Positions 6,366-26,303 of a stretch of DNA of 64,000 bases are shown here, one piece after another (within the stretch, counting starts at the first letter, position 1; each line of letters begins with the position of its first letter). The position numbers and the translations under genes were made by a program. Under the pieces are notes generated by a model that saw only the letters and a program-made list of their open reading frames with translations, had not been told where the DNA came from and did no database searches. Source of the DNA: Zygnema circumcarinatum SAG 698-1b (Eukaryota; Plantae; Zygnematophyceae); the NCBI GenBank assembly GCA_037447605.1, contig CM074811.1:1984001-2048000 (forward strand). The letters are read 5' to 3'.

Positions 6366-9300
6366 CTACTTTTGGCGCTTGTAAATCTTCGCCAGGAATG
6401 CCAAGAAGACCGCCTGCATGTGCAGATTCGCATCCACCCTTGCAAGCCATCTTTAGGTCGTTTGTACGGCAGGAGTTGCAGGGTCAATGTGCAGCCAATG
6501 ATGCATGGTGAGGCCGCCTCATGTATTGGAATTAACATGTGAAGCAGAGAATGAAATTCGTCACGTGGGGTTGGAACTGCAAGGAAGAATGGTCAAATCA
6601 TATGACAAGCCTAGTGCTAGGATAAATAACGCATTACCTGAAAGGAGGGGTCTTCCAGTTGAGCAATTGCTTGTCTCAGTTGAACGTATGTCACACGCTC
6701 ATATTCTACAAATGCCTCCTGCAAGAGGGAACATCCATGAGAGGAACCTTTCAGAATAGTAGAGAGAGTTCAATGAGTTCCTCCGTGTGATCTCATTGGT
6801 TTCGTCATCATTGAAGAATGCCATTCCAAGCAGCTACCCAACCAACTACAGCGACCTGAGTGATCTAAAAAATGGGATCAAATGTAAAATATTTCTGGCG
6901 ACATGCAAGAAAAAAATTGATTCGTCACTGTAGCAATTTGAAACCCTCATGCGGCCTTTGAACATTTCAGCTGCTTTTGCTTCGATTTCATGCCTAAAAG
7001 GCGTTAGAAGATACCTTCAACTTCAAGTCCTCGTAAAGTTGCTTCACTCGAGCAACGCAGTCTGGGTCTCTTTTTCCATAATTGGCCTGCCGACAGACAC
7101 ACAAATTTGCGAGAGTCCAAAAGGGCAGGAACACTTCGCTGACTTCTGAAACCATAGGAAATGAAGCCATGAGGATTATCATTTGATATATGAACACAAG
7201 TTCCCTTTTTGCCCAGCCCATCCTCCTTTCCTGCCTTCAGCCCCTACCTTCAAGTGCTCGCGCTGCTCCTCTGAGGCACGCTGCAGGGCCTGCACCACGA
7301 GCCATGAGCATTTTGTGTCTTCGATATCTGTGCCCACCTGCCTCCATCGCAGCCACCCAAAACTATGAGAACTTTGAAAGACCAACTGAGAACAAGGACA
7401 GGATCATCCAATTCACTCTACCCATGAGTCAAATCCGGCTGCATGCCATCTAGAAAGAATGCGTAGATGACAACGCTCAATTTGCAGAATCCACCGAAGT
7501 TTGCGTTAAAAGGCAACTATCAGTCTCTGAGGCCTATAACGCAACTTCTTTGACATCATACATGCAAAGGTTACAGAGAGAACTAGGGATGAGTGACAAC
7601 CAATATGCGCTTTAATCCGGGAAAATGCTGACTTTCATTTCATCACACTCCAGTGGTTAAACAATTGTTTCAGAATGATCAGATATTCTCTTGTGTGCTT
7701 TCTTGAACCTTACATCCCCAACACTGTTTTACAATTGACAATTACCTTGCCAATGAAGGAAGGGTCCCCATAGCAGTCCAGGACATCATCCTGCCATCAC
7801 CCATAGCCAACAAAACCCCCAAACTGTGAGACAGACACGCGTGGGAAACTCCTCCCCTGTTTATCAAGAAGTTGGTAGGGGCAATGGGGTGCAATTCAGG
7901 ACCTGCACTTGAAAGTAAGTTCCCATCTGCACCAAAATGTCCTTGGCCGTTTTGAACATGCTTTCATCCTTCTCGCCGGTCAGAAGCATGGCACAAGCGA
8001 CCTGCAAATAAGCCATACAATACATGAGTGAGAGCATAGCATCATAAACTTCCCCTGCACACTCAGATTTTGTATCCCTCCATATCCCTTTGAGCTTACC
8101 TTTGAGTTCTATTCCGAGTTGATGACTCATCTGACTGGGACAAATGCTTCGTCAGACAAGTTCCCACCTCAAGATTAATTTCTCACATTCGACGCTTTTT
8201 CTAGAACTACAGCAAACCACGAACGGGACGGGCCACACCCCTAACCCTAAGGAAAGAAACCTTCTCTGCCATGCAACGTGGACAAGCCAAGATTGGTCTT
8301 AATAGAGTTCATCAATGGCCATTCCTTGCCGCAAAAGGTCCTCAGCGACCGTACCGGCAAGTAAAAGGAATAATAGGCAGTTTTGTACTGCACGATTTTC
8401 ACATACCTGCAAAACATCCAGGCCCTCAAAGACTACTGTAAAGGCACAGAGAAATCAAACCAAGGGCATTGAAGGTAGAACGATGACTTACTGTCAACAG
8501 CTGCAAGCATTTTTTTTCTTGTTTAAGTGAAAGGGCAAGCGTCGTCTTCATACAATGCCCCGGTTCTAGCAAGCATTGTTCAGAACACAGAAACCCAGTG
8601 CAAGGTAAGGATGAAGTGAAAAAGGACTGGAAGAAATACACCTCACAAATGCTGAAGAGTAGAGTCCCACGATCAGGGAGGATAAATGCATTGAACAGTG
8701 AAATACGTGAACTAACTTTGTTGGTGGGGGCAAGTGGAATATCTTACGTGGAAATGGTGTACTTTGACAAATCTACCTCCCCTTCTGGAGTCGTAATCAG
8801 ATCCAGCATTTGCCCGCATGCTGTCTGATAAGAGACCTGCCCATCCACATCCGCATCCACATCCACATTCATTCATTCATTCCAAATCTTGGCACAGGTT
8901 CACAGCAGTATTCAGCCAACAATTGCATGGCCTGGCATTTACACCTTAAAAGTGAAGGAAACAGCAGTTATATAGGGCCTGAAATAGAAGACTACAGAGT
9001 TCGAAAGACGACGTTGAACGATGTTCAAGAACGACGCAGACGATGATAAATATGACTTTATGTTTGACAGAGCTTGATGATGCTCAAAAAGGGCGCTTCA
9101 ATGAATCGGACCTCGTTGAAAAGGTCGATCAGATCCACATAGTAGGGCTCAGACTTGAAGTGACGCTTGAGGATGAGGAAGATGTGGGAGCTCAACAGGA
9201 TGGCATCGTTGATGGCTATGAGGCCCACCTGCTCCTCACCCAATGCCACCCTCCTACACTGCTAGTGGGTCTGCTGACGTTAAGCTTTTAAAGGCAACTT

Positions 9301-11416
9301 GAGAAAAACAGAGCTCAATATGACCACAAGTGGAGACTGTCAGGGAAGGCAGAGAGACGGGGGTGAAGAAGAAAGCAGGGATGAGAGAGGTTCCGCTTGC
9401 ACAGGTTTTACCTTTGGGACTTTGTACCAGCAGGGATTTCCTCGGCGAGTGATTGAATGATCCATGATATCGTCCATGACCAGAAAATAGCCCTGGAGCT
9501 GAATCCACTTTCCATGCGTGCAGTCAGTCACCACTGTTGCGATTTGCCTGACTTACGTTGGGAAGATTATTGCTCGTTTTCTTCATTGACAGATTCAGAC
9601 TTGACTTCTTAAAAGGAAATCAACACTAGAATAGCTCACGCACCGAGTGACAAAAACTGCTTTGTTAACGCGTGACCAATTGATTCTATTCACACCTTAC
9701 TGTCATTCGATTCCGTCAAAAAATAAAAACGTCTAAAAGATCAAAAAGTTGTAGTCATAACACTCTCCACAGACAAGCATTAAATGGAAAGTAGATGTCT
9801 GGATAGGCTGCCTATTTACCCATTCAATGCACCATCCAAGGGAGCAGGCTTTGAAAACCTCCTCCTCAGTAAGCGCGCCATCCTTCTTCAGCAGCCTCGC
9901 ACTATCCACCACTGACAGCCCACGGTTCAATTTTCCTGCCACATTCCCAAACACTTTTCATCGTATAGGAACTTATGAATGTTATCCTGTTGCTGGACAG
10001 CGAAGGATAGTTCGTCATTTTCGGGCAGTAACCACAAAGTCAAAGAGAAAAACTCCAAATGGCAAGCAATTCACATGTAAATATCTCTTTGGCCATTGCC
10101 TGACTTTAAGAAATCCCAAATCTGACGGTCAAGCATCTGCTGCCAACTGCCTTGCTCACCTCCAGGAACGTTGTAGTCCATGTTCTGTACTCCTTCCAAC
10201 CCATAGCCCAAAAAATGGGAACAAAAGAGAAATAAGGAGATGAATATCATATCAGAAAAATACAATCCACACCTCTTTGATTTGAAGGCAATCTCATAAT
10301 ATGCCAAACTTTATCCGCAACAATGGAGACACATTGCATGTCTCAAGAAACACTGTTCGTTGGAAGCAAGAGAAAGATTACTCCAGAGAACTGGAGCACA
10401 AGAAACATCCTTTCAACTGGTCAAGGAACCCAAAAAAAGATGTCAGTATGATTGAATCCGAACATACATAAGTGGCTGCTGCTGAGAAGCTCTACTCAAC
10501 AACAACAACAACAAAAAGCTGACCTTCTCAGACCATTCTCTCGACTCTGGTGTGTGCTGAAAGCTTTCAGTATCCGCCAAAAGTCCTGCCTTCAGTATGG
10601 AGTACACCTCCAAAAACTTCTCCCGGTTAGTTGGTGCTTTAGCTTTTCCCACTCCCGTGTCATTCGCATCTGTAACAGTCAAGCCAGTAGCCCAATCCGT
10701 CCCAATAGCTCTCATTAGCCAACATCTCTAATTTTCTATTGTTTTGCAGCCTATGAGGTGATTTCGGCACTAGACGCCATAAAACTCGAGCTCATCCATT
10801 GATGGGGGGCATCTAGTGATGAAAACAAATGCTAATAAGTCAAGATCAAAAAAGCAATTTAGTTATTATTGGAGCCATTAACTCTATATGAATCACTTGC
10901 GGTCTCCTCTCTGGTTGCAAAAGAAGTTATTCAACCGGAGGGATAAGTCAAATATTAAGAGGTTAAAGAAGCTAAAGGTTGGGCATTTGCCAGAATGACA
11001 GTCGATCCACCCTCGATAAATAGTGACTAAAAGGGATTCCAGTTTGCCACAACGAATATAAGAGCGAGGCACGGCTGGTTAACGGGATAGAAGTGACATA
11101 CATTCATCCCGAGAAAAATTGATATGGAGGAATCTTGTCTCGTGATACCCGCTAAAGAATAATGCACCATGCGCTGCTGCTCCACATGGAGAGCCAAGTT
11201 CTATAAGGCTGGGCATGCTAGCTCTGTAAAGCAACTCATTGCCAATTTGATATGAGAGTTAATAATGTCGTTTCTAAGTAGAGGGGCAAAATCACTTGTC
11301 ATTCTAGTCATGAGGACTGTTGAGTGGATGGAAATTCTGAAATAGGTGGTCAGCGACGTACCGTCGCCCTTAAGAGGAACGTCAACTATTTCACCTCCGC
11401 CAGTAGAAGCAGCCAT
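6366..11416 (-). CDS. FPS: Farnesyl diphosphate synthase, multi-exon (possible 5' extension to 13170)
   Basis: [35 protein letters not shown] (first Asp-rich motif with Y/F chain-length residues), [57 protein letters not shown]-terminus KIYKRQK*. Exon 11395-11428 joins 10669 in phase to give MAASTGG-DANDT. Confidence 0.96.
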
Positions 11417-13169: not shown

Positions 13170-13720
13170 TTCCCTGCAACACAGCACCATGCCGTACTGT
13201 AACTGTACTGTACAGTTCTGTACAGTACAGTAAAGGGCCCTCGTAGTTTCCACCCTGTACAGTGCGTCCCCAAGAAATTCGCCATGATTTTGCCGAAACC
13301 ACTTTTTTGTACGGTAACTCTGTGTTAGCCGTACTATTCTTACTATCCGTACTTGCTGCACTAGCCGTTACGGACTTCAGCAAAACACCGAATCTTCCCG
13401 CACTTGCCGCCGTAAGAGGCGCTCGCTCCTCTCCCCTTCTTCTTGGATTCGATACGGGACGATACGATACGATACTTTGAGTTACGATATTGTACGGTAC
13501 AGTACGATATGGTATGGTACGATACGTACGAACAAACATGAACTCTAACATAATACCGCCCGCCTATTGGTAACACGAACCTTCTATTTGCAAAATCAAG
13601 ATTTTCGCCCCATATTTGCCAAAACCATGGCGAAAATATGAGGACCCCTTACTGTACAGTACAGTACATCGGCTGTAGAGGCCGTACCGTACGGCCCGCA
13701 TTGGCAGGCAGTGTGCAGGG

Positions 13721-13755
<35 letters not shown>

Positions 13756-13786
13756 TGGCCGCGGCGTGATCGGACAAGCGAGGCCA
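13170..13786. promoter_or_regulatory. Probable divergent promoter between FPS and the tandem-NAP gene, with TACGA/GTACA-rich and (GCCT)n simple repeats
   Basis: Head-to-head ATGs at 13170 (-) and 13786 (+). Low-complexity gatacgatacgatac and gtacagtacagta tracts; (cctg)n at ~13721-13754. Confidence 0.45.
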
Positions 13787-16700
13787 TGGCCGACGCAGGG
13801 GCGGCTTCGCGGCTGCGCTCTATTCAGGTCGGCTGCTCCTCCCTCCCTCCCTCCCTCCCTCGTACACCCAGGCCGCTGCAGCAGCCTGGCTTCTTTCTGG
13901 CGATTCTCCAGGACTTTTTGAAGCTCGCAACCACTGCTGAAGGCGCTATTTTCCAGCAGCTAGCTGGAATAAAATTGAGTCGTAAAAGTAGTCAAGCTCA
14001 CAAGCGTTGAAAGTTCGTGTGTTTGGACACCGGCGAGTTTCATATTTGACGACATGCATTCCTGAAACCTGCATACGCCGCAGTATTTTTTTTTCTGGAG
14101 CGCAACACGCTTGCATTTGGTTAAAAATGATTATCCCTGAAGTTATGCAGCTACTCGCAGCTGAAAAAGCTCTAAATAGAGACTCGCATGTTTTGCGACG
14201 AAGTAGCGCTCCGTTATCTTTAAGGGGCTCCATTAACTTCATTCAACTGGATGCTCATCTCATAAGACTGGAATAGTGTGAGGAGATTTTAACACTTCTG
14301 GCTTAGCCAATACAATGCCTAAAAGCTCTGCATTCAGCATCAACTCCAGATAGTTTAGGGAATGCATTGCTAGAGCTTTCGAAACGAGCGAACTATGTAA
14401 CAAGGGTTGGGAATGTAGTGAAAACGAGTTCCTCGCTTTGTACCCCCAAGACGCACGCGAGTCACTCGTTAGTCACTTGATAACACCCTTTTTTTAGTAG
14501 ACATATTTAAATATTTAAGTTGAAGACGATGTTGAAACCATCAAGGTACTGCATGTACATTCTTTGATGGTAATCTTCGTATTTAGCGTGTTATTTTTTT
14601 CGTCGTACTTAAGCAGTTTTTCATCTTGCTTATACTCGCCAGCTGCTTGTATAAGCCAGACAGGCGTATGTGTGCGCAAGCAGTTGATACTGGAGCTAGC
14701 CAGATCAGCTATAAACTTGAAAGCATGGACAAGCAGCGTTACATTTAGGAAAAGGAGCAACCTTAGATGCCTTTAAAGGTTGTGGATAACAACTCACATT
14801 CTTGGGGCTGCCTGCAGGAAGAAATAAACGACCTTGAGGAGCGACAGAGCATAAAAAAGGCAGAACGAGAGAAGGCCTTTTTGGATGCTTGCGCACCACT
14901 GTACGAAGTGAGAACAACTTCGATAGAGAGAACCGCTCATGCAGGTTACTGGATGTTTTCATGACTTGATTTAATTCAACCTTGTCGACGAGTTACTATG
15001 AAGTTCCGTCGTTTCTTCTTTCCTTGTTTTACGAGGCATATAATTCTCTTAATCCCTTTGCCAAGAGATAACTCTGTGTTGCATCTATTCGCCTAGGGTG
15101 TTGTCTCACTTCTCTGCCATGGGCTTTGTTTACACCTTTAGAAACGCAGAAAGATTGTGAGGGGAGATGTGGAGCCGACAGAAGAGGAGGACGAACTTCA
15201 CGATGGGGAGGAGATCCACAGTGACGAGGCGAGAGGTGGCTCCAAAGCGACGAAAGGCATTCCGCTTTTTTGGTTGACTGTCCTAAAGAACCAGGTCATT
15301 GGCGTGAATCGCTCATTTGCCTGCCTCTTCTTCTTGAATCACTTTTGTCACAACAATGAAGAAGGTATATCAATGACGTCCATGCATTTTCATATTAGAT
15401 TGCCGCCTCGTTTTTTTCTATGCCTCAATTGTGGCAGACCCGCAGTCAGAAAAAGTGTGTTTGAATAGTAATGTTTTCGCACGTGTCCCGTCAGAAACAT
15501 TACGAGGTTTGCAATCCCACCGGCACACATTCTTACTATGGGCGGCGCCTTCCTGACGCCCCTCAAATTGCTATCTCTAGCTGCAATTTTTGCTATCACA
15601 GCTCTAATATATGGCTTGCAATTCCACCATCTTGTATTGTGCGCGTTCCTACACTATGATTTCTTACCCTGAATGCAACTTTTATCTGCTTCTGGTGCTT
15701 GTACAAGTTTATTTGCCGCTTCATATCCCACCTACCCATGAAGCATTTTCTTTGCTTGCACTGGCAACAAAATCTCAAGCTTTGGATCAATGAGAACCTT
15801 TGTTAGGTATCGTTGTTGAGAACCTGCTGTGCATTCCAAGTGGCCTCGCAGAAGGCCATCTACATTGCGGCCTAACCTATCTCCAAAATGCTGTTCTTTG
15901 GAACTTCCCTGGACTCCTAGAAGGAAAAGGAAAACCCTCATTCACGCATTACTTCGCTATGTTTGGCTCTCCTTGTATGGCGCCCCCACTGCAGGACGTC
16001 ACGTCAGGATACCTCAAAAATAGAGATGATGACGTTTTGGCATATCTCGAAGATATTCGCTGCATGCGTCCAAAATCCAATCCATGGGGGTATGTTGAAC
16101 CTCCATAGGCAGAGACTCCCTTTGGCCAAGTGCATGTTGTCCTTTGCTTAAGCAGGCCAGGGATATTGTACAAATGGGTACTTCTCCAGAAAATAACTAG
16201 CAGAACTCTCTTACCTCGCTGACCCTCAAGTTGGGATGTGAGGAAGTTTTTAAAATGAGCTTTACTTGAGCCTCAGAAGCCAACTCGTAAAATTTTGGAA
16301 GTTGCGAGGAATATGTGATGGGCACTGTATTCTGATCTATGTGTTGCCGGCAAAGATTTTTTTTTTGCCTGCTTCATTCCACTCTTTTTCCGCTGTGGTT
16401 ATCATTGTGTGCAGGTTCCGTGTGGAGTTTATTTTCGCCGTGAACCCGTTTTTCCATGACAGGATGCTTGTGAAGGAGGTCCAACTCCCGTACTCCGGTG
16501 CGCCCATGAGTGAAGCAGCTCTCACAGAGACTCCGCCAATACGGTGGAAAAGTACAGAAAGCAACGTCACTGTCTCTGTGAAGGCCCCTCCGAAATCTGC
16601 AAAGAAGCAGAAGGTAAGGCAGGATTCGCTGTTCTCTCCCACACGTGTCTGCTGCCTCCCTGATTGGCAGCTCAATGATTGGCTTCCAGCTCCCCTGCTG

Positions 16701-18853
16701 TGGGGCCCGTGCAGGGGGGAAAGGGGCGGAAGGAGGAGTATGCTCCTGCAGGGGAAGGGAAGGCAAAGCCCTGCCAGTCGTTCTTCAGCTTCTTCACAGA
16801 GGGAGGCCAAGGGAAGAGGAGAGGTGGGGTAGTCGGTGCTGATGAGGAGGATGAAGGGGAGTTGGACTTTGTGGGAGGAGGAGCCGAGCATGTACAAGTG
16901 CCGGCAGATCATTGGGAGGTTCTTATGGCGCTATGGCATGAGGTATGCCCATGCTTCAGGATTGTTGTGTTTGCAATGTTTTGGTTGGGAAGCAAACCAC
17001 GACAGGCGTGCAAATTTGGTGTGATATGTTTTTTTTACGAGGCAGAAGATAACACATCGTTTGGGTAGCAGATCTGTTCTCTTCTTCTTCTGTTCTCACC
17101 TTTTCAGACATATCATGAGAATCTTTTGAATTTGGGATTCCTTCTCCTTCATTCAAGCACTTGTTGGTTCTGCAGATGAGTGTCCTCTATATGTTCTCCC
17201 AAATGTTTTGTGAACCTGCATAGACTATCGGGGGTTTGCTGCTGCAGGTGGTTCCCTCTGCAGTGGAGCTGTTCATCTCGGGCGGCTTTCCCTCGTCCGG
17301 AAATAAGTTGGATGAAGATGACGAGTATGGAGTTGTTGACCCAGATAGCAAAGGGCTGGAGAACTTACCACTACCTATTCAGAGACGAGTCAGGTGAGGG
17401 ATAGTGGCGAGAGAGAGAGGAAGGGAGGGAGGGAGGGAGGGAAGGGGTGACGGGAAGCTGGACTGGTAGAAGGGGGGTAACGACTGATTGGGCGAAAGGC
17501 TTGATCATACAAGTGACTGGTGTATGGTTGTGTGTCAGAATGCAGTTGATGCTCTGCACTACTCGGAATGTGAAACTTTGGTTTGCATACTGAAGAAATT
17601 CTCACATAGCGATGCTGTTAGTACGTTGATGCAGAGCGCTACAGCATTTTCACGCAAAGCAGACAGCCCTTAAGCGGGAATACGTTCAGACCTTGTCTGA
17701 GATAAGTGATGATTTTGAGAGTGATGCCGCTGGCCTCTACGCACAACGAAAAGCCATAGTTTTGGGGAAAGCAGAGAAGAGGTGAGTAAGTCACGCACTA
17801 ACCCAGAGCTATCTGTGCCTGCTGACCTCTGTCCTCTTTCCTTCACTCAATTCTCCACTCCATCTGTTGCATGTCCTTTCTCTCCTCCTCTTTCTTCCCC
17901 CGCATTGTCTTAATAGGACTTCTGCCTTTCCTGTGCTTTTCAGTGGCAATCCCGCCGATATGAATGTGCCTCGGTTTTGGCTTCTTGTTCTCAAAAGCTG
18001 CCCCGCAACAGTGGAGCTACTTCGGCAAAGAGACGAGCTCCTTTTGAGCCATTTGGCAGACATTCGCTGTCGTAAGCGCAAGGAAGGTGCAGGCTTCCAT
18101 ATCGACTTTGAGTTTTTGGGGAATTGCAAGTTGTGGATGGACAACCGAGTGCTGACCAAGACATTCATCTCCGCCTCCGAAGGGGGAGAGTTTCTGCGAA
18201 CGGAGAGCACACCAGTAGTCTGGCAGGAGGATATGCAGGTGACAGTAAAGACAGTTTCGACTGGGAAAGGAACGGGTAAAAACAGGCCATGCCCCAGGTA
18301 AGTCTTTTTTTTCGCTTGCGTATGTAAAGCCAACGGAGCGGGCTTTTGCATATGTGACAGCTTTGAGAGAAGGCATTCGTTGCTACACATTGCAGCCTTT
18401 GTTAGCTTTCTACGAGCACGAGTCACCTCTGTGTTAGCACCCTCCTTTGGAATACTATCGGCCGTAGCCGGAAACCGGCGCTAAAGGCGCCCCTTAGTTC
18501 ATTGTCTTTATGTCTTCTACTCGCAAAGTTGTGACCAGCACCATTGCATGAGCGACTCCATTTTCTTTACCTATAACTGGCTGCAACTGCCTTTCATGCA
18601 GTCCGGTTACTTACTGCTTTTCTGATGGGGTGGAGGTTTCAGCTTTTTCCACTTGTTTGACCAGAAGAGGACTCAGCTTTTGTTTGCTGGCGAGGACACA
18701 GCGCCGCTCTCTGCTGCCGCTCTAAGGGACAGAGAGGCTGAGCTTGGGGCAGCATTGCGGGAAGTTGTCGTTCCTCGAGCCGTTGAACTCTATGAGACTT
18801 CGCAGACATGGGATCATGGGGACGAGGATGAAAGTGACGACGATGATGATGAC

Positions 18854-18884
<31 letters not shown>

Positions 18885-19285
18885 CCGAGGTATGTGGATG
18901 CATACATAAATCAGCAGTCTATGGCATGGCCGGGCTGTGCCGCATTGTATGATTCAGAGATGAGTGTTGCATGTTCCTTTGCAGTAGTGAAGTTGCGCAG
19001 TGTTCCGGAGCACATCTCTTTCTCAAACCCCATCTTTTCATGGTTCGGTCGTTGAATGCGCTTGTGCAGGACGATGAAGATCTGAATGACCCCTCCTCTA
19101 TTGAGAAGAAACTGAAAGCAAGAAAAAAGTCACGGCGGAAGAACAGAGGTGATGATGATGATGATCGCGTGTGCTGCGGTCTGTCTCGCAACGCCGCCAT
19201 GACTCTCCTCCTTCTGCTCGTATTCAGCAGCCAGGTGTTCGCGTACTTCGATTCCATTCTCGCGTTCTTTGGTTATTCAATCTAA
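13786..19285 (+). CDS. Protein with two tandem NAP1 (nucleosome assembly protein) domains, poly-Asp tract, basic patch and C-terminal hydrophobic helix; 638 aa, 11 exons
   Basis: Exons 13786-13827, 14818-14907, 15142-15294, 15995-16089, 16415-16613, 16715-16942, 17248-17393, 17635-17781, 17944-18297, 18643-18889, 19070-19285 join in phase (1917 nt). NAP motifs occur twice: PLYEKRRKIVRG/GIPLFWLTVLKN/YLEDI/NPFF/CQSFFSFF/VVPSAVELF and LYAQRKAIVLG/VPRFWLLVLK/HLADI/CPSFFHLF/VVPRAVELY. Confidence 0.88.
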
Positions 19286-19789
19286 ACTCAGCCATGCGGC
19301 GGCCTCACATCATAGTGCGCGCTGAGCGCTCAATCTAAGGGCTATTTCTCTGTCCTATTTTTTCGTGAAGGAATTTTTGTGCTGTGGAACAAAGATGTGG
19401 CCAAGTGATGGTTTGTAAAGTTTCAAAAATGAAAATAAAATGTCGTCAGTTTTCACTCGGGTTTGTGTGTCGTTTGGAAGATCTAACGGCCGTTGGCCCG
19501 TAATCTCACACGCGGTTATCCAGCCGTCAGCATGCCAGTCGTGCGCACGTGGTATATCCAACGGTCGATAAACTTGAGATCTCGCACGCGTCTATCCAAC
19601 GGTCAGTCTCCAGATGTGGCACGTGTGGCATATGCAGTACGGTAGGTGGTTTTTTAACCCGAAAATCCGCTGCGTCGACTGTAAACTGGTCTGAATATTG
19701 TCGGTCCACTCCAAAATTTTTAAGAGCAGGAAAATTTCTGAAGTTTTGAAGAGAAATTTGAATTTTTAATCGTGCAGTGCACAGAACTT

Positions 19790-21043: not shown

Positions 21044-24000
21044 TCACGCCACAGGAACCTCCGCCATGGATGCGGCACTCTCCTCCGCCGACTTCTGAGC
21101 GAAGCCACTCTCCATCGGCGCCAGTTTTGCAGCGGCAGCCATGGCGACTGCGTTCATCGCGCTTATCTGCTCGTCCTTTATCTGCTCATGGAACATGGGA
21201 CACACGAAATGCGGCAAAAGGTGAGGTCAGTAACTCTCTACAGTGACTGCAGCACAAAAGCAGGGATCCAAGTGAGGTTCCTGCTTGGCTAAGTAAGGGG
21301 CCAAGTTGGTAGTAGTGGTGTTTTTAGGGCACTTTTTAACTGCAGAGGAAGCAAGAGTAATTCACACCTTGAGCATGGCCGCGAGGTCGGCTCCGTCGTC
21401 GAGGGCCTGGAGGTCTCCGATCGTGATTGTCTGCAACACATCGAGGCCACACATTACTGAAAAATCGCTTTGGAACCAGAGGAGGTGCCTAAATGCCTCC
21501 AAACAAGAAGCTGCCTTGTGTGTAAAAATGGCATGTAGCTCGTCTCCAGATGTACCTGAAGCTGCTCGGGCTCCAAGACTATTTTCCGGCGGTGTTCAAT
21601 GAGTTCGATGATGTCGATTCCGGTCATGGACGTTAAGCCCAAAGCCACAAGATCCTCTTCCGGTTTCAGTTCCTGCCCCTGCAGATCACAATACGATCAA
21701 GATTAGTGCGCAGATAAGTTCCATCCTATCGACTTCAGGCTCAAAGTCCCCCTTACCCTCCCCTCCCCCATTACCTGACGAACCTGACCTGGGATTCGGA
21801 AGCTGGGGAAAAGTTACCATATAAGACCTGCGTATCTCAATCTGCTACTTGCAGCTTCATGAACGCACTAATGGGTAGGTGTAGGAACCTGAATTCCCAT
21901 CATGGTAGTCACAGCTTCCAGAAATGTTTTGCCATCCCATTTCTCTGCACCCTTGTCCACTTCTGCTTCCTGTGGCAGGGAGGCATCAGATTTAGCGGAT
22001 TCGAGGGCCGATTCCTGCAGCATTTTTTCCTCAATTGCTTGTAGTTCAGAGGTGTTAAGGCTAACGCTTTGCTCGGGAGCCGAAGACAACTCTTCTTCTT
22101 CGGCTGCCTCAGCCTTCCTGCGTTCTTCCTGCCGCCAGCAATTCACGTTCCAAGTGTCAAGAGACAATTCTACTTACAGATATTTGAATAGTTCGTGGGC
22201 TTCGTTGGTGGTAGTAAACGTTGCAATGTGGATATAATAATATTACGAGATTTGTATATAATGTCTACAGCCTGGCAGAGAGAAACCTGTAGTGCAGCGG
22301 CGTTGAGAGAGCAGCAGTCCTTGTTAAGAATCTTAAGCGCGCCAAGCGTCAACTTTGAGCTTGTCTCCTTCCGCCGAATCTTCCCGCTTGTCGTCTTGGG
22401 AATCTGTTCAAGCCGAAATCCAAATTAAACTCCTCCCACCTGGCAGTCCTATTGTCATTCACTCCCTCCTCAGACATGAGAAATCAGCTCAAAATGCAGG
22501 GGGGGGACAAACCGTGCGTGGAGCGATGAGAGCGATTGTGCTGGGAACAATTCCATGGCCGCCCACCACCGCCTTCCGGATGTCGGCGGTGACGGCGGCG
22601 AGCTCGCCCGCAGTGAGTCCCGCGGACCGCACTTCGGCGACGATGGCGACCGTCTCCTCCTCCGAGGGGGCGCCCGCGCCTGCTTTGATGGCGAATGCGG
22701 CCACGCATCCAGCGCGGACATGCTCGGATGCCACCTCCGCTGTTCTCTCAACGTCCTGCCACAGGAGGAAGGGAGTGGGAGGGGGAGAGGGAGAGGGAGA
22801 GGGAGAGGGAGAGGGAGAGGTGACCAATATTAAACCAAACGAGGACTGCTCCAACTAATGTGCGAATTCTCACCCTTTCACGAAGGAAAGGATGAAAGAC
22901 AGGAGGAAGGGAGAGGGAGAGGGAGAGGGAGAGGGAGAGAGTTAGTCACATTAGTTGGACTGCTCCAACAAAGGAAAGGAAAGGATGAAAGTACCTGTGG
23001 GTAGTAGTTCCTTCCGCGGATGATGATGAGGTCCTTGATGCGTCCAGTCACAAACATCTCACCCTCGACAATGATGGCAAGATCGCCCGTTCGAAGGTAC
23101 TCCCCATCGTCAGATCCGGGTGCTCCGGGTGCCATTTTTGCATGAAATGTCTGCGCAATGTAGCTTTTTAGATTTGTAGGCGATACCTATCGTGTAGGTT
23201 TGGAAGCTTTCCAGGCTCTGGTAAGCTACAAGATTTGTCAAATGACAGCCTTAAATGTGTCGCGCACATATTTCCTCATTAACTTGCGAGTTTACTTGCC
23301 AGCAGGAAGTTAAATACTTATCTAAACTTCAGAAGCTAAAATGTCAATGCCCAACACATCCTCTAGAGGAGCTACAATCGGCAAGAGCCGACCTACCTCC
23401 TTGCTGAGCTCCTCCTTCTTCCAGTAGCCGAGGGCCACACTGTGACTGCGCAGCCATATCTCACCCTCCTCTCCCTCCTTACACACAACGTGTGTGTCGG
23501 GGTTCACCAAGGCCATCCGCCCGTCCATCACAAACATCTCCACTTGCCCACTCGAGTGTACTCTGTGACGTTTCTTGCCCTCTCCAATGTATATGACCTG
23601 CCAAACACAATAATCAGTAAAGGCCCTCCAATTAGAAACATCTTCTTCTCACTCGCGAGCTTCTTGCGGATGATTGGCTTGCTCGGAAGACCGATAGGGG
23701 CTGGCTAACTGGCTAGCTGGCTAGCTGGCTGACTGGCTAGCTGGCTGACTGGCTGACTGGCTAGCTGGCTAGCTGGCTGACTGGCTGACTGGCTAGCTGG
23801 CTAGCTGGCTGACTGGCTAGCTGGCTAGCTGGCTAGCTGGCTAGCTGGCTGACTGGCTAGCTGGCTGGTTAGACTGAATGCTCACCTTGCTGCCCCAGGC
23901 CGAGACTCCCACCACATGTTCGGCGAGGCCATAGCAGGGGCACATGGCAGACGGCTGCCAGCCGTACCGTGAAAAGGCGGCATTCCACTTCTCCATGGAT

Positions 24001-26303
24001 TCCGCCCTCACGGGCTCCGCAGCGTTCATGAGGAACTCCAGGGAGCTCAGGTCCAGGCCGTCCGGAGCGTCCTTCTCGGCGTTGAATTTGCGCGTGCAAA
24101 GTTCTAAGGCGAAGTTGGGAGCTGCAGTGTGGGTGATCTGCGTCCAAGTGTCGAAGAGGTCATTTACAACAGAAACTAGGTGGAAAAGCAACACTTGTTT
24201 TAGATGCACTAGAAATTAAGTTCTGGGAGCAATTGTTGCCGGCATTGCACGACGTGTCACGGTGATTGCGAGTCGCTCACTTTGAACCGGCTCATGAACT
24301 GCACCCAAAGCGAGGGCCGTTTGATGAATGTGATTGGCGACATGTAGAACCCGCTCGCTCCTGTGCTGAGCGTGATCATGTACGCCACGATGAGGCCCAG
24401 GTCGTGGTACTGCAGGGAACCCACAGAATTTTTGAGTGTTCAGAAATTACAGTCAGTAACCGCAGATGCGTTCAAAGTTATGGAATAGTGCATGCGCTGA
24501 GAGTGTCCTTATTGAGACGACCGATAGTCACATACCTGTGGAAGCCAGCTCAAGAAGCGGGTATTTTCATCAAAGCGCATTGCTCTGCACAAGGCAGAGA
24601 CACGAGATGAGCCGTGTTTGTAACTAAATCACGACCAATCGAGGAATTATGTACCCTTACAAGGTGAACCCCCCCCCCAGGCAGTGCCGGATCCAGTTTT
24701 TTTGTTGAGGGGGGCCTTAGCCCTCTTTCAGCATAAAATACATAAGAAAATAAAAAAAATTCTAAACCTGAGGGGAGACTACCCTCTTTCAGCATAAAAC
24801 ACAAAAGATAAGGTTGTGAAAAGTTCATTTTTAAAACCTGAGGGGGGGTCTAAGCCCCTCCAACTTGTATATGTAGGTCCGCCCCTGTCCTGCCAGGAAA
24901 ACACACCTTGGTAACTTGGTGAGGTGGTGGCCAATGTTGGAGTGCGCTACCATGACTCCCTTGGGGTCCGCAGTAGAGCCCGACGTGTACTGGAGAAAGG
25001 CTACCGGGCTTGCAGGCGGCGGAAAGATCCTCGCCATGGGCTTTGAGAATGGCTGCACATCTCACACTTGAAGTCAGCCTCATGAAGGATTGTAGTGAAA
25101 ACCTGCCGGCCCAAGGTGGGACAGAAATTCATGGGGAGGTACACAAAAGGTGGGGTTGTAGGGTTTTTAGGGTTGCGAAGACTTTTAAATTTAAAAAAAA
25201 ATTGTAGATTATGTGCATTAATAGCACCAAGTTCGCTCGGTTATCTAAAGGTGTATTATTTTCTGTAATAGAATTAGCAAGGATTACCTTGATTCCATCC
25301 GTTGTTTTCCAGACTTCTCCCGGCCATCGGATGCAGCGTACATATGACATGAGGACCACATTGTAGTAGCTGCGACATACATCACGGGGAAATAGGCGGT
25401 TCAATGTTCTGAGCAGCATGCATGGGAACATTCCACCCGCTAGCTTAAGCAGGGTTCGCAGAAATCGCATTGCTCGAGAAACTACCGCGGCAAACTAACC
25501 GCGTATTGAGAGCTTACTGGAGAGTAGCCTCTTATTAAAAATGTAAGCCACCTATGGAAGTTAAGGTGGGGGCATGTATGCGCAGACCTTTTGCTTGTAA
25601 GGACAAGTTTGGCCTCCGAGTCCGCGACCAGCCTCGTCAGCTTAGGAAGATCTTTGGTGAGGTCGTTTGGATTTGGAGGATACGACGGCACCGCGATGGC
25701 TCCTGCAATCAAACGATTGGCTGAGCCACAGGTGGGAGCTGCCTCCAATGCATTGACGACGTCAAGGACGCGAAAATATTGAAGGAAGAAGAAAATTCGT
25801 ATTCGTATTTCGACGTATTCGTAGAGCACATACCTGCGTGCAGGCAGGCCACGAAAGCTACAAGAAACTCGAGGCCGGGCGGGTACACAAGAACCACTCG
25901 GTCTCCGTTCTTCACTTTCCATGAGTCCAGCATGGTCGCCGCGATGGCGCGCGACTTCGCATCAAACTGTGGAGATCAGATAAAAGATGGGGTTTGAATA
26001 TGTTCTGTATTGAGATCTTACATGAGATGGAGAATCGTGGCACGTCAACGCATAAAAAAAACTCACCTCTGCGTACGTGAAGCTCTGTGAAATTTGCCCG
26101 TTCTCCTCCACCCATGAAAGAGCAGGCTTTGACGGGTACTTCTGAACAGACTCCTCCAAAAACTGAAAAAAATTCTTCACCTCCTCTGTTTCCCACTTCA
26201 ATCGCACCTCAAACGGCGGCACAGTGAACTTGCGTGGATGGGGTACGTCACACGGACCGGGAAATGTCTTGAACTTGCCATTCTTTGTTTCCATTTCCGC
26301 CAT
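21044..26303 (-). CDS. Fatty acyl-AMP ligase (FAAL)-like adenylation domain fused to a C-terminal acyl carrier protein domain, multi-exon
   Basis: GDRVVLVYPPGLEFLVAFVACL, AFLQYTSGSTADPKGVMV, SWLPQYHDLGLI, APNFALELC, NAAEPV, PCYGLAEH, GEIWLRSHSVALGYW, LRTGDL, GRIKDLIIIRGRNYYPQDVE, IPKTTSGKIRR. An acidic linker follows, then EEDLVALGLTSMTGIDIIELIE...TITIGDL (ACP; Ser codon 21628-21630). TGA at 21044. Confidence 0.9.
23700..23870. repeat. Intronic compound microsatellite (CTGG-CTAG/CTGA octamer units)
   Basis: About 20 copies of ctggctag/ctggctga just inside an intron of the FAAL gene. Confidence 0.9.
24682..24887. mobile_element. Possible small non-autonomous DNA transposon (MITE-like) in a FAAL intron
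   Basis: Imperfect terminal inverted repeats cagtgccggatc ... ggtccgcccctg. Internal direct repeats ccctctttcagcataaaa x2 and aaacctgagggg x2. No clean TSD. Confidence 0.45.

What the first reader, a model, noticed from the sequence alone, without database searches (positions are those of the whole stretch)
13786..19285. Single-chain double NAP1 histone chaperone with an NLS-like patch and a tail anchor
Seen: one uninterrupted 638-aa ORF with two full, mutually divergent NAP domains. The second has its own dimerisation helix (LENLPLPIQRRVRALQ). It is followed by poly-Asp, KKLKARKKSRRK, VCCG and a terminal hydrophobic stretch AAMTLLLLLVFSSQVFAYFDSILAFFGYSI*. Known: NAP1 is a soluble homodimer, and plant NAP1s usually end in a CaaX farnesylation box. 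Inference: an intramolecular pseudo-dimer tethered to a membrane (inner nuclear envelope or ER) that docks or stores histones; the CC motif could be S-acylated.
Basis: partly seen in the sequence, partly recalled or inferred. Interest (0 to 1): 0.8.

Follow-up and report, generated by a model that had tools for sequence, protein, structure and literature searches.

The report
Membrane-anchored double NAP histone chaperone
This alga expresses a real, correctly spliced gene that joins two copies of the normally soluble, dimer-forming NAP1 histone chaperone in one chain and ends it in a membrane-spanning tail; the same layout is conserved across green algae and I found no paper describing it.

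Summary
Eleven GT..AG exons (13786-19285, + strand) give a 638-aa protein with two full NAP domains. An acidic run, a basic patch, a VCCG motif and a hydrophobic C-terminus follow them. Spliced transcript contigs from four independent studies support all ten junctions. The end of domain 1 and the start of domain 2 lie inside one exon.

It is not a one-off. A full HMMER scan found the same layout, NAP-NAP-acidic-basic-C-terminal hydrophobic helix, in these groups:
- other streptophyte algae, including Mesotaenium;
- Chlorophyceae, Trebouxiophyceae and Ulvophyceae.

Domain 1s group together in a tree, and domain 2s fall in lineage-specific clades apart from them. The fusion therefore probably predates the split of the two green lineages. 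The window's tail is as conserved as the NAP cores, at 59.5% identity.

AlphaFold models of two orthologues (pTM 0.56 and 0.63) place the two long helices antiparallel in one chain. That is a built-in pseudo-dimer.

Membrane identity, histone binding and S-acylation are untested; tail rules favour the ER or nuclear envelope. I class it as a new variant of a known family.

The parts
13786..13827 (+). Exon 1: start codon and first 14 aa, the beginning of the long helix of domain 1
   Evidence: The junction to exon 2 is seen as 70-87 nt overhangs in runs X1 and X2, whose 30-mer is unique at 13795-13824.
14818..17286 (+). Exons 2-7 (first part): the rest of NAP domain 1, aa 15-282, ending VVPSAVELFISGG
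   Evidence: Pfam NAP on exons 3-6. Local HMM domain 1, envelope aa 5-305, 166 bits. Junctions 14907/15142, 15294/15995, 16089/16415, 16613/16715 and 16942/17248 are in all four runs.
17287..17355 (+). Acidic linker of about 23 aa between the two domains, inside exon 7
   Evidence: Exon 7 (17248-17393) holds the end of domain 1, the linker and the start of the domain 2 helix with no stop. The Glu/Asp-Tyr/Phe-x-Val-Val motif recurs in relatives.
17356..18820 (+). Exons 7 (end) to 10: NAP domain 2, aa 306-544, with its own long helix
   Evidence: Pfam NAP on exons 8, 9 and 10 (20.4, 73.1 and 14.9 bits). Local HMM domain 2, 204 bits. Junctions 17393/17635, 17781/17944 and 18297/18643 are in all four runs.
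18821..18889 (+). Acidic tract (Asp/Glu run, mostly GAT repeats) at the end of exon 10; it continues into exon 11
   Evidence: It is the counterpart of the acidic C-terminal tail of ordinary NAP1. Transcript contigs break in this repeat.
19070..19285 (+). Exon 11: last 71 aa and the stop codon
   Evidence: Contigs of all four runs start 31-33 nt upstream of 19068 with the unique end of exon 10. Intron 10 has depth 0-3.4, against about 100 for the exons.
19106..19141 (+). Basic patch KKLKARKKSRRK, aa 580-591
   Evidence: Net charge is +3 to +7 in the 30 aa before the hydrophobic helix in nine of eleven family members; the two exceptions are P0035, with net charge 0, and the truncated P0010.
19169..19180 (+). 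VCCG motif, aa 601-604, on the cytosolic side near the membrane
   Evidence: VCCGLSRN is identical in the window protein, P0001 and P0002. It is absent from most chlorophyte members.
19193..19249 (+). Predicted transmembrane helix, aa 609-627
   Evidence: Kyte-Doolittle 19-residue mean is 1.89, the maximum of the protein. The next best elsewhere is 1.41. The equivalent segments are helical in the AlphaFold models: 633-659 in P0001 and 556-584 in P0044.
19250..19282 (+). 11-aa C-terminal element after the helix; no basic residue, net charge -1
   Evidence: It fits the ER-type rule quoted in PMC8644595.

Best explanation
Shown: this is one expressed gene for a 638-aa protein made of two diverged NAP (NAP1-type histone chaperone) domains in tandem. 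An acidic tract, a basic juxtamembrane patch and one hydrophobic helix that ends 11 residues from the C-terminus follow the domains. It belongs to an old green-algal family with this same layout. Inferred from models of two orthologues: the two long N-terminal helices, which in ordinary NAP1 pair between two subunits, pair with each other inside the single chain. The protein would then be a ready-made asymmetric 'heterodimer'. Inferred from sequence rules: the tail inserts after translation as a tail anchor, most likely into the ER, which is continuous with the outer nuclear membrane. The whole chaperone body would then face the cytosol or nucleoplasm. Inferred from family membership: the body, with its acidic tract, binds basic cargo at the membrane surface, most likely H2A-H2B, as a tethered histone acceptor or buffer. 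Green algae and plants also attach ordinary NAP1 to membranes through a farnesylated CKQQ end. This family uses a permanent protein anchor instead.
For: Gene and transcript:
- The model has 11 GT..AG exons.
- All ten junctions are seen in spliced contigs from four studies. Single contigs of 1361-1576 nt span both domains.
- The overhang 30-mers are unique and map to the exon ends.

Domains:
- Pfam NAP matches both halves.
- A local HMM gives 166 and 204 bits.
- In the models each half aligns to NAP1, SET and Vps75 structures at Z up to 20.

Family:
- Proteins with two NAP stretches and a hydrophobic C-terminus occur in Mesotaenium, an unnamed transcriptome, Myrmecia, Edaphochlamys, Volvox, Gonium, Neomeris, Bryopsis and two metagenome proteins.
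- In the tree, the domain 1s of ten members form one clade (SH-aLRT 99). The domain 2s form separate streptophyte (92) and chlorophyte (96) clades.

Tail:
- Ten of eleven members have one hydrophobic 19-mer (Kyte-Doolittle 1.9-3.25) ending 0-14 aa from the C-terminus. None has another such segment, and nine of the eleven have a net positive flank.
- Window aa 600-638 are 59.5% identical to both streptophyte orthologues, as high as the NAP cores.

Pairing in cis:
- pTM is 0.56 and 0.63 although 26% and 17% of residues are disordered.
- Matches to antiparallel helical hairpins span model residues 1 to about 400 and 1 to 322.

ER rule: a nonpolar or negative C-terminal element (PMC8644595).
Against: - No experiment bears on localisation, membrane insertion or histone binding.
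- The tools gave no model coordinates. Pairing in cis rests on pTM and on the ranges of low-Z (4.6-6.8) hairpin matches, in orthologues and not in the window protein itself.
- The window's hydrophobic helix is the weakest of the family (1.89) and holds Ser-Ser-Gln.
- Domain 2 of the window protein is nearly neutral (net charge -1, pI 6.7), unlike typical acidic NAP domains.
- Chlorophycean members carry Arg/Lys after the helix, which by the same rules could point to organelle outer membranes.
- Transcript contigs break in the GAT repeat, so no single contig runs from exon 1 to exon 11.
Confidence: 0.6

Rival explanations
1. The architecture is the same, but the anchor sits in the chloroplast or mitochondrial outer membrane. 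The acidic NAP body then handles basic non-histone cargo there, for example precursor or ribosomal proteins, or RNA.
For: Chlorophycean and trebouxiophyte members have basic residues after the helix, for example an Arg-Ser-Lys or Arg-Gly-Arg stretch. Positive C-terminal elements are associated with organelle outer membranes (PMC8644595). A NAP-like protein of Chlamydomonas, cNAPL, works in the chloroplast and binds RNA (PMC1636423).
Against: The window protein and both streptophyte orthologues have no or one basic residue after the helix, and no RK/ST-type or dibasic motif. cNAPL is a single-domain soluble protein with a transit peptide and is not a member of this family.
Confidence: 0.15
2. 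The two long helices pair in trans, domain 1 with domain 1 and domain 2 with domain 2 of other chains. This would give membrane-bound dimers or chains rather than a single-chain pseudo-dimer.
For: Both helices keep full length, and ordinary NAPs dimerise in trans. The evidence for pairing in cis is only a prediction without coordinates.
Against: Two independently modelled orthologues, about 28% identical, give the same antiparallel contact in cis. Their pTM values are well above what one domain alone could contribute. The short linker of about 23 aa is conserved in length.
Confidence: 0.15
3. The hydrophobic C-terminus is not a membrane span. It is a protein-interaction helix or a degradation signal, and the protein is soluble.
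For: The window's segment is only moderately hydrophobic (1.89). It contains a conserved Gln, and a conserved Asp directly follows it. That conservation suggests specific contacts.
Against: Across distant lineages the sequence changes but the length, position at the extreme C-terminus, hydrophobicity (up to 3.25) and positive flank are kept. That is the signature of a tail anchor. Conserved polar residues inside membrane helices are common at helix-helix contacts.
Confidence: 0.08
4. It is a gene-model artefact: two neighbouring NAP genes, or a tail exon that is not really joined.
For: Some database proteins with two NAP domains and no tail (P0004, P0037, P0107, P0134) look like recent tandem copies or merged models.
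Against: The junction of the two domains lies within exon 7. Spliced contigs from four studies cover both domains and the last junction. Complete transcript ORFs of other species have the same layout.
Confidence: 0.02

Closest known systems
NAP1 / NAP1-like histone chaperones (Pfam PF00956; structures 2AYU, 5G2E, 6K00)
   Same: Both halves have the NAP fold: a long helix plus an alpha/beta domain, at Z about 18-20. Both match Pfam NAP. An acidic C-terminal tract follows domain 2.
   Different: Known NAP1s have one domain per chain, are soluble and form homodimers in trans. Here two diverged domains (37% identity) sit in one chain, followed by a transmembrane tail. There is no N-terminal extension.
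Farnesylated NAP1 of plants and green algae (C-terminal CKQQ)
   Same: It is a member of the same family that is attached to membranes in the green lineage. The CKQQ end is reported for plant and Chlamydomonas NAP (PMC1636423) and is seen in hits P0011, P0016 and P0030.
   Different: The window protein ends in ...GYSI with no Cys at position -4, so it has no CaaX box. Its anchor is a protein helix and not a lipid. It has two domains instead of one.
Plant nuclear-envelope proteins anchored by a C-terminal membrane helix (NEAPs at the inner membrane, tail-anchored WITs at the outer membrane)
   Same: They have a soluble body followed by a membrane helix at the extreme C-terminus (PMC7746247). 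From my own recollection, NEAPs also carry an NLS before the helix.
   Different: There is no sequence relationship. Their bodies are coiled coils and not a chaperone fold. No localisation data exist for the NAP-NAP family.
cNAPL, the chloroplast NAP-like protein of Chlamydomonas
   Same: It is a NAP-family member of a green alga with a non-nuclear location (PMC1636423).
   Different: cNAPL has 350 aa, one domain and an N-terminal transit peptide, and is predicted soluble. It has no tail anchor.

Membership tests
NAP family (PF00956) | Profile match above the curated threshold | tested here: met
   Single exons already pass 28.6 bits: exon 3 scores 37.2, exon 5 scores 34.8 and exon 9 scores 73.1. 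Orthologue P0001 scores 274 bits in two stretches.
NAP family (PF00956) | Long N-terminal dimerisation helix followed by an alpha/beta domain | tested here: met
   This was tested on orthologues only. The long helices are 2-49 and 344-394 in P0001, and 3-49 and 278-327 in P0044. Each half aligns to NAP1 structures at Z 18-20. The window sequence aligns to these helices without gaps.
NAP family (PF00956) | Binding of histones H2A-H2B and/or H3-H4 | not testable with these tools
   Only net charge could be computed. Domain 1 is -15 and domain 2 is -1, plus an acidic tract of about 30 residues.
Tail-anchored membrane proteins | A single transmembrane helix within about 30 residues of the C-terminus | tested here: met
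   The best 19-residue window is aa 609-627 (Kyte-Doolittle 1.89), 11 residues from the end. This holds in 10 of 11 family members.
Tail-anchored membrane proteins | No signal peptide and no other hydrophobic segment | tested here: met
   The next best hydropathy window is 1.41, inside a NAP helix. The N-terminus is polar and helical. No dedicated signal-peptide predictor was available.
Tail-anchored membrane proteins | Post-translational insertion with the N-terminus in the cytosol | not testable with these tools
   This needs insertion or localisation experiments.
CaaX-prenylated NAP1 | C-terminal Cys-aliphatic-aliphatic-X box | tested here: not met
   The spliced product ends ...FFGYSI. Only a rare read-through of intron 10 would end in a Cys-Arg-Ile-Val box.

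The most novel reading that the evidence does not exclude
Green algae have kept, since before the chlorophyte/streptophyte split, a single-chain asymmetric NAP pseudo-dimer bolted to the ER/nuclear-envelope membrane. It would hold or hand over histones at the membrane surface as a membrane-bound histone buffer. Land plants appear to have lost it and kept only farnesylated NAP1.
Probability: 0.3. Interest if true: 0.75.

Novelty: new variant of a known kind. Interest (0 to 1): 0.62.

Why it matters
NAP1-type chaperones are textbook soluble homodimers. A conserved natural version would matter in three ways:
- The two halves are fused and have diverged, so it shows what an obligate asymmetric NAP dimer looks like.
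- The anchor suggests that some histone or basic-protein handling in green algae happens at a membrane surface.
- It offers a permanent-anchor counterpart to the poorly understood farnesylation of plant NAP1.

Related species that are grown in the laboratory (Volvox, Gonium, Mesotaenium) also carry the gene, so localisation and binding tests should be practical. Databases label the members only as 'hypothetical protein' or 'nucleosome assembly protein'.

Tried and rejected
- Word-index protein searches with P0001, both whole and restricted to domain 2, returned only ordinary single-domain NAPs. They did not even return Mesotaenium P0002, so they say nothing about distribution. The third search, with P0007, added only Gonium and a second Volvox sequence.
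- The ESM Atlas feature search and shape search returned only generic NAP clusters.
- Six literature searches for double or tandem NAP domains, tail-anchored NAP1 and membrane-anchored histone chaperones found nothing relevant.
- I considered cNAPL of Chlamydomonas as a possible known relative and rejected it: it has one domain, a transit peptide and is soluble.
- I considered a KASH-like luminal tail and rejected it by eye: the family has no conserved terminal Pro-Thr-type motif.
- Shared intron positions between the two domains would indicate a recent internal duplication. None coincide; the nearest pair is offset by 3 codons. This is consistent with an old duplication.
- The joined 638-aa model has no reference, so I did not submit it to any search or folding tool. 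Searches were run exon by exon. The joined protein was used only inside local scripts for translation, hydropathy, a local HMM, MAFFT and the tree. The folded proteins are the orthologues P0001 and P0044.
Full report
**Observation**

I rebuilt the gene model from the window sequence. Eleven exons on the + strand join into a 1917-nt reading frame of 638 codons plus stop, and every intron is GT..AG. The exons are 13786-13827, 14818-14907, 15142-15294, 15995-16089, 16415-16613, 16715-16942, 17248-17393, 17635-17781, 17944-18297, 18643-18889 and 19070-19285.

The ORF is uninterrupted only after splicing.

Scanned exon by exon, by reference, Pfam NAP (PF00956) covers two successive full passes of the profile:
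- Exons 3-6 cover profile positions 41-229. Exons 3 and 5 score above the gathering score on their own.
- Exons 8-10 cover positions 5-264. Exon 9 scores 73.1 bits.

A NAP HMM that I built locally from 76 single-domain hits gives two domains on the spliced model, 166 and 204 bits. The two domains are 37% identical over 206 aligned positions, z=29 against shuffles.

The joined protein has no reference, so it was never sent to a search or folding tool. It was used only inside local scripts.

**Transcription and splicing**

The runs that hold this stretch hold about half of its sampled words, as expected for exons without introns. I laid contigs from four runs of four different studies on 13700-19400.
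- Eight junctions appear exactly as in the model, in all four runs. They include 16942/17248 and 17393/17635.
- Single contigs of 1361-1576 nt run through both NAP domains.
- The tool skipped two repeat stretches, so the first and last junctions appear as overhangs.
- The overhang before 14815 is the end of exon 1, and the overhang before 19068 is the end of exon 10.
- Each 30-mer overhang occurs once in the window, at 13795-13824 and 18858-18887, directly before the donor sites.
- Intron 10 has depth 0-3.4, against about 100 in the exons.

The run type is only guessed by the tool. However, contigs lacking all introns can only come from RNA.

Limits of this evidence:
- These are assembled contigs and not reads.
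- They break in the GAT repeat, so exons 1-11 are not seen on one molecule.

Independently of RNA, the end of domain 1, the linker and the start of the domain 2 helix lie within the single exon 7.

**A conserved family**

I ran the one exhaustive HMMER scan because the novelty claim rests on the presence or absence of relatives. The query was exon 9. The scan returned 381 proteins, and the best were not ordinary NAPs.
- P0001 has 662 aa and is 58% identical to the query.
- P0002 has 539 aa and is 47% identical.
- Both have two NAP stretches, with the query matching the second one.

Reading the sequences shows the same order of parts in P0001, P0002, P0003, P0007, P0008, P0035, P0044, P0096, P0119 and P0266. 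The order is NAP, short acidic linker, NAP, acidic tract, basic patch, then a hydrophobic helix at the very C-terminus.

Their sources are as follows:

| Protein | Source |
|---|---|
| P0001 | unnamed Trinity transcriptome (complete ORF) |
| P0002 | Mesotaenium endlicherianum |
| P0003 | Myrmecia bisecta |
| P0007 | Edaphochlamys debaryana |
| P0035 | Volvox africanus |
| P0266 | Gonium pectorale |
| P0008 | Neomeris dumetosa |
| P0044 | Bryopsis sp. |
| P0096, P0119 | metagenomes |

Ostreobium P0010 has both domains but a differently modelled end. All named members are labelled 'hypothetical protein' or 'nucleosome assembly protein'.

In a tree of separated domains with 30 single-domain NAPs:
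- The domain 1s of ten members form one clade (SH-aLRT 99), split into streptophyte and chlorophyte branches.
- The domain 2s form a streptophyte clade (92) and a chlorophyte clade (96). The branch that joins these two clades is weak.
- The long-branch metagenome protein P0096 does not join either set cleanly.
- Two-domain proteins without a tail (P0004, P0006) have their own two domains as sisters, so they are independent and recent.

The fusion therefore most likely predates the split of Chlorophyta and Streptophyta. No land-plant protein with this layout appeared among the 150 listed hits. That is suggestive of absence, not proof.

**The tail**
- In ten of eleven members, the most hydrophobic 19-residue window (Kyte-Doolittle 1.9-3.25) ends 0-14 residues from the C-terminus.
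- The 30 residues before it carry net charge +3 to +7 in nine of the eleven members. The exceptions are P0035, with net charge 0, and the truncated P0010.
- No other segment comes close in hydrophobicity.
- The window's value, 1.89 at aa 609-627, is the lowest of the family but above the usual 1.6 threshold.
- Window aa 600-638 are 59.5% identical to both streptophyte orthologues. That equals the NAP cores (54-68%) and exceeds the linker (20-29%).
- A Gln inside the helix is conserved in 8 of the 10 members with a complete tail, and an Asp just after the helix in 7 of them.
- The VCCGLSRN motif is identical in the three streptophyte-type proteins only.
- Pfam finds nothing in exon 11.

These are the sequence criteria of a tail-anchored protein.

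A review of plant tail-anchored proteins gives these rules (PMC8644595):
- ER targeting: a hydrophobic helix followed by nonpolar, negative or no residues.
- Organelle outer membranes: moderately positive or dibasic ends, or RK/ST ends.

The window's 11-residue end has no basic residue and net charge -1, which fits the ER type. Some chlorophycean ends carry Arg/Lys, so the membrane may differ between lineages.

**One chain, one pseudo-dimer?**

I folded two orthologues that are about 28% identical, each with the family alignment.

| Model | Mean pLDDT | pTM | Long helices | Terminal helix |
|---|---|---|---|---|
| P0001 | 71.7 | 0.56 | 2-49 and 344-394 | 633-659 |
| P0044 | 77.3 | 0.63 | 3-49 and 278-327 | 556-584 |

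Each half aligns to NAP1, SET, NRP1 and Vps75 structures with Z up to about 20.

The tools returned no coordinates. Two indirect results bear on the arrangement of the domains.
- A single domain makes up at most about 40% of either chain, and 17-26% of residues are disordered. The pTM values therefore require a confidently fixed arrangement of both domains.
- After the NAP-family rows, the structural aligner lists antiparallel two-helix hairpins. These include the RNA polymerase clamp coiled coil, colicin Ia and the DHp hairpin of kinase HK853. Their aligned ranges run from model residue 1 to about 400 in P0001 and from 1 to about 322 in P0044.
- Only the two long helices can supply such a match, so in both models they lie side by side and antiparallel. 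That is the geometry of a NAP dimer.

**Mechanism I commit to**

The protein is a tail-anchored, cytosol- or nucleoplasm-facing, single-chain asymmetric NAP pseudo-dimer on the ER/nuclear-envelope membrane system. It binds basic cargo, most likely H2A-H2B, helped by its acidic tract.
- Shown: the gene, its splicing, its domains, and conservation of the layout and the tail.
- Inferred: pairing in cis, membrane insertion, which membrane, the cargo, and S-acylation.

The basic patch may be an NLS, or it may be the ordinary positive flank of a tail anchor. I cannot separate these.

Precedents exist for C-terminally anchored nuclear-envelope proteins in plants (NEAPs, WITs; PMC7746247). There is also a precedent for lipid anchoring of NAP1 through CKQQ in plants and Chlamydomonas (PMC1636423).

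**Comparison and novelty**

Both halves are members of the NAP family, so this is not a new kind of protein. The combination of two diverged domains in one chain with a conserved tail anchor is not described in any paper I could find. This scan had not noted it before. Chlamydomonas cNAPL is a different, single-domain, soluble chloroplast protein. I class the finding as a new variant of a known kind.

**Surroundings**
- Upstream on the opposite strand lie exons of a polyprenyl synthetase gene.
- Downstream is the gene noted by the scan at 21044-26303.
- Low-depth contigs cover parts of introns 1, 3 and 4.

Noticed in passing
window 18890-18955: If intron 10 were retained, the frame would run on for 22 codons and stop with a Cys-Arg-Ile-Val end. 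That is a CaaX-like box in place of the tail anchor. Depth in the intron is 0-3.4 against about 100 in the exons, so such a form is rare at best.
   Followed up: partly
window 14481-14907: In run X5 a contig of depth 21 runs unbroken from intron 1 into exon 2, and another covers 13876-14257. An in-frame ATG at 14767 would give an alternative N-terminus that replaces the first 14 residues. This could be intron retention or a second start.
   Followed up: partly
window 7864-8130 and 9733-9954, minus strand: Two ORF pieces match Pfam polyprenyl synthetase (22-23 bits each, profile positions 149-185 and 15-51). An intron-rich farnesyl/polyprenyl diphosphate synthase-like gene probably lies upstream on the opposite strand.
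   Followed up: partly
window 13720-13765, 13838-13862, 17405-17451, 18833-18893: Short tandem tetranucleotide and trinucleotide runs: (CTGC)n just before the start codon, (CCCT)n in intron 1, (GGGA)n in intron 7, and the coding (GAT)n run. The reads tool skipped these, and transcript contigs break at the last one.
   Followed up: no
proteins P0004, P0006, P0015, P0037, P0107, P0134 (not in the window): Other database proteins with two NAP domains but no hydrophobic tail. For P0004 and P0006 the two domains are each other's closest relatives (SH-aLRT 100). They are therefore separate, recent duplications or merged gene models and not members of this family.
   Followed up: partly
proteins P0096, P0157, P0158 (metagenome, not in the window): A very divergent double-NAP protein whose hydrophobic helix ends at the last residue. 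Both of its domains sit on long branches, so its place in the family and its organism are open.
   Followed up: no
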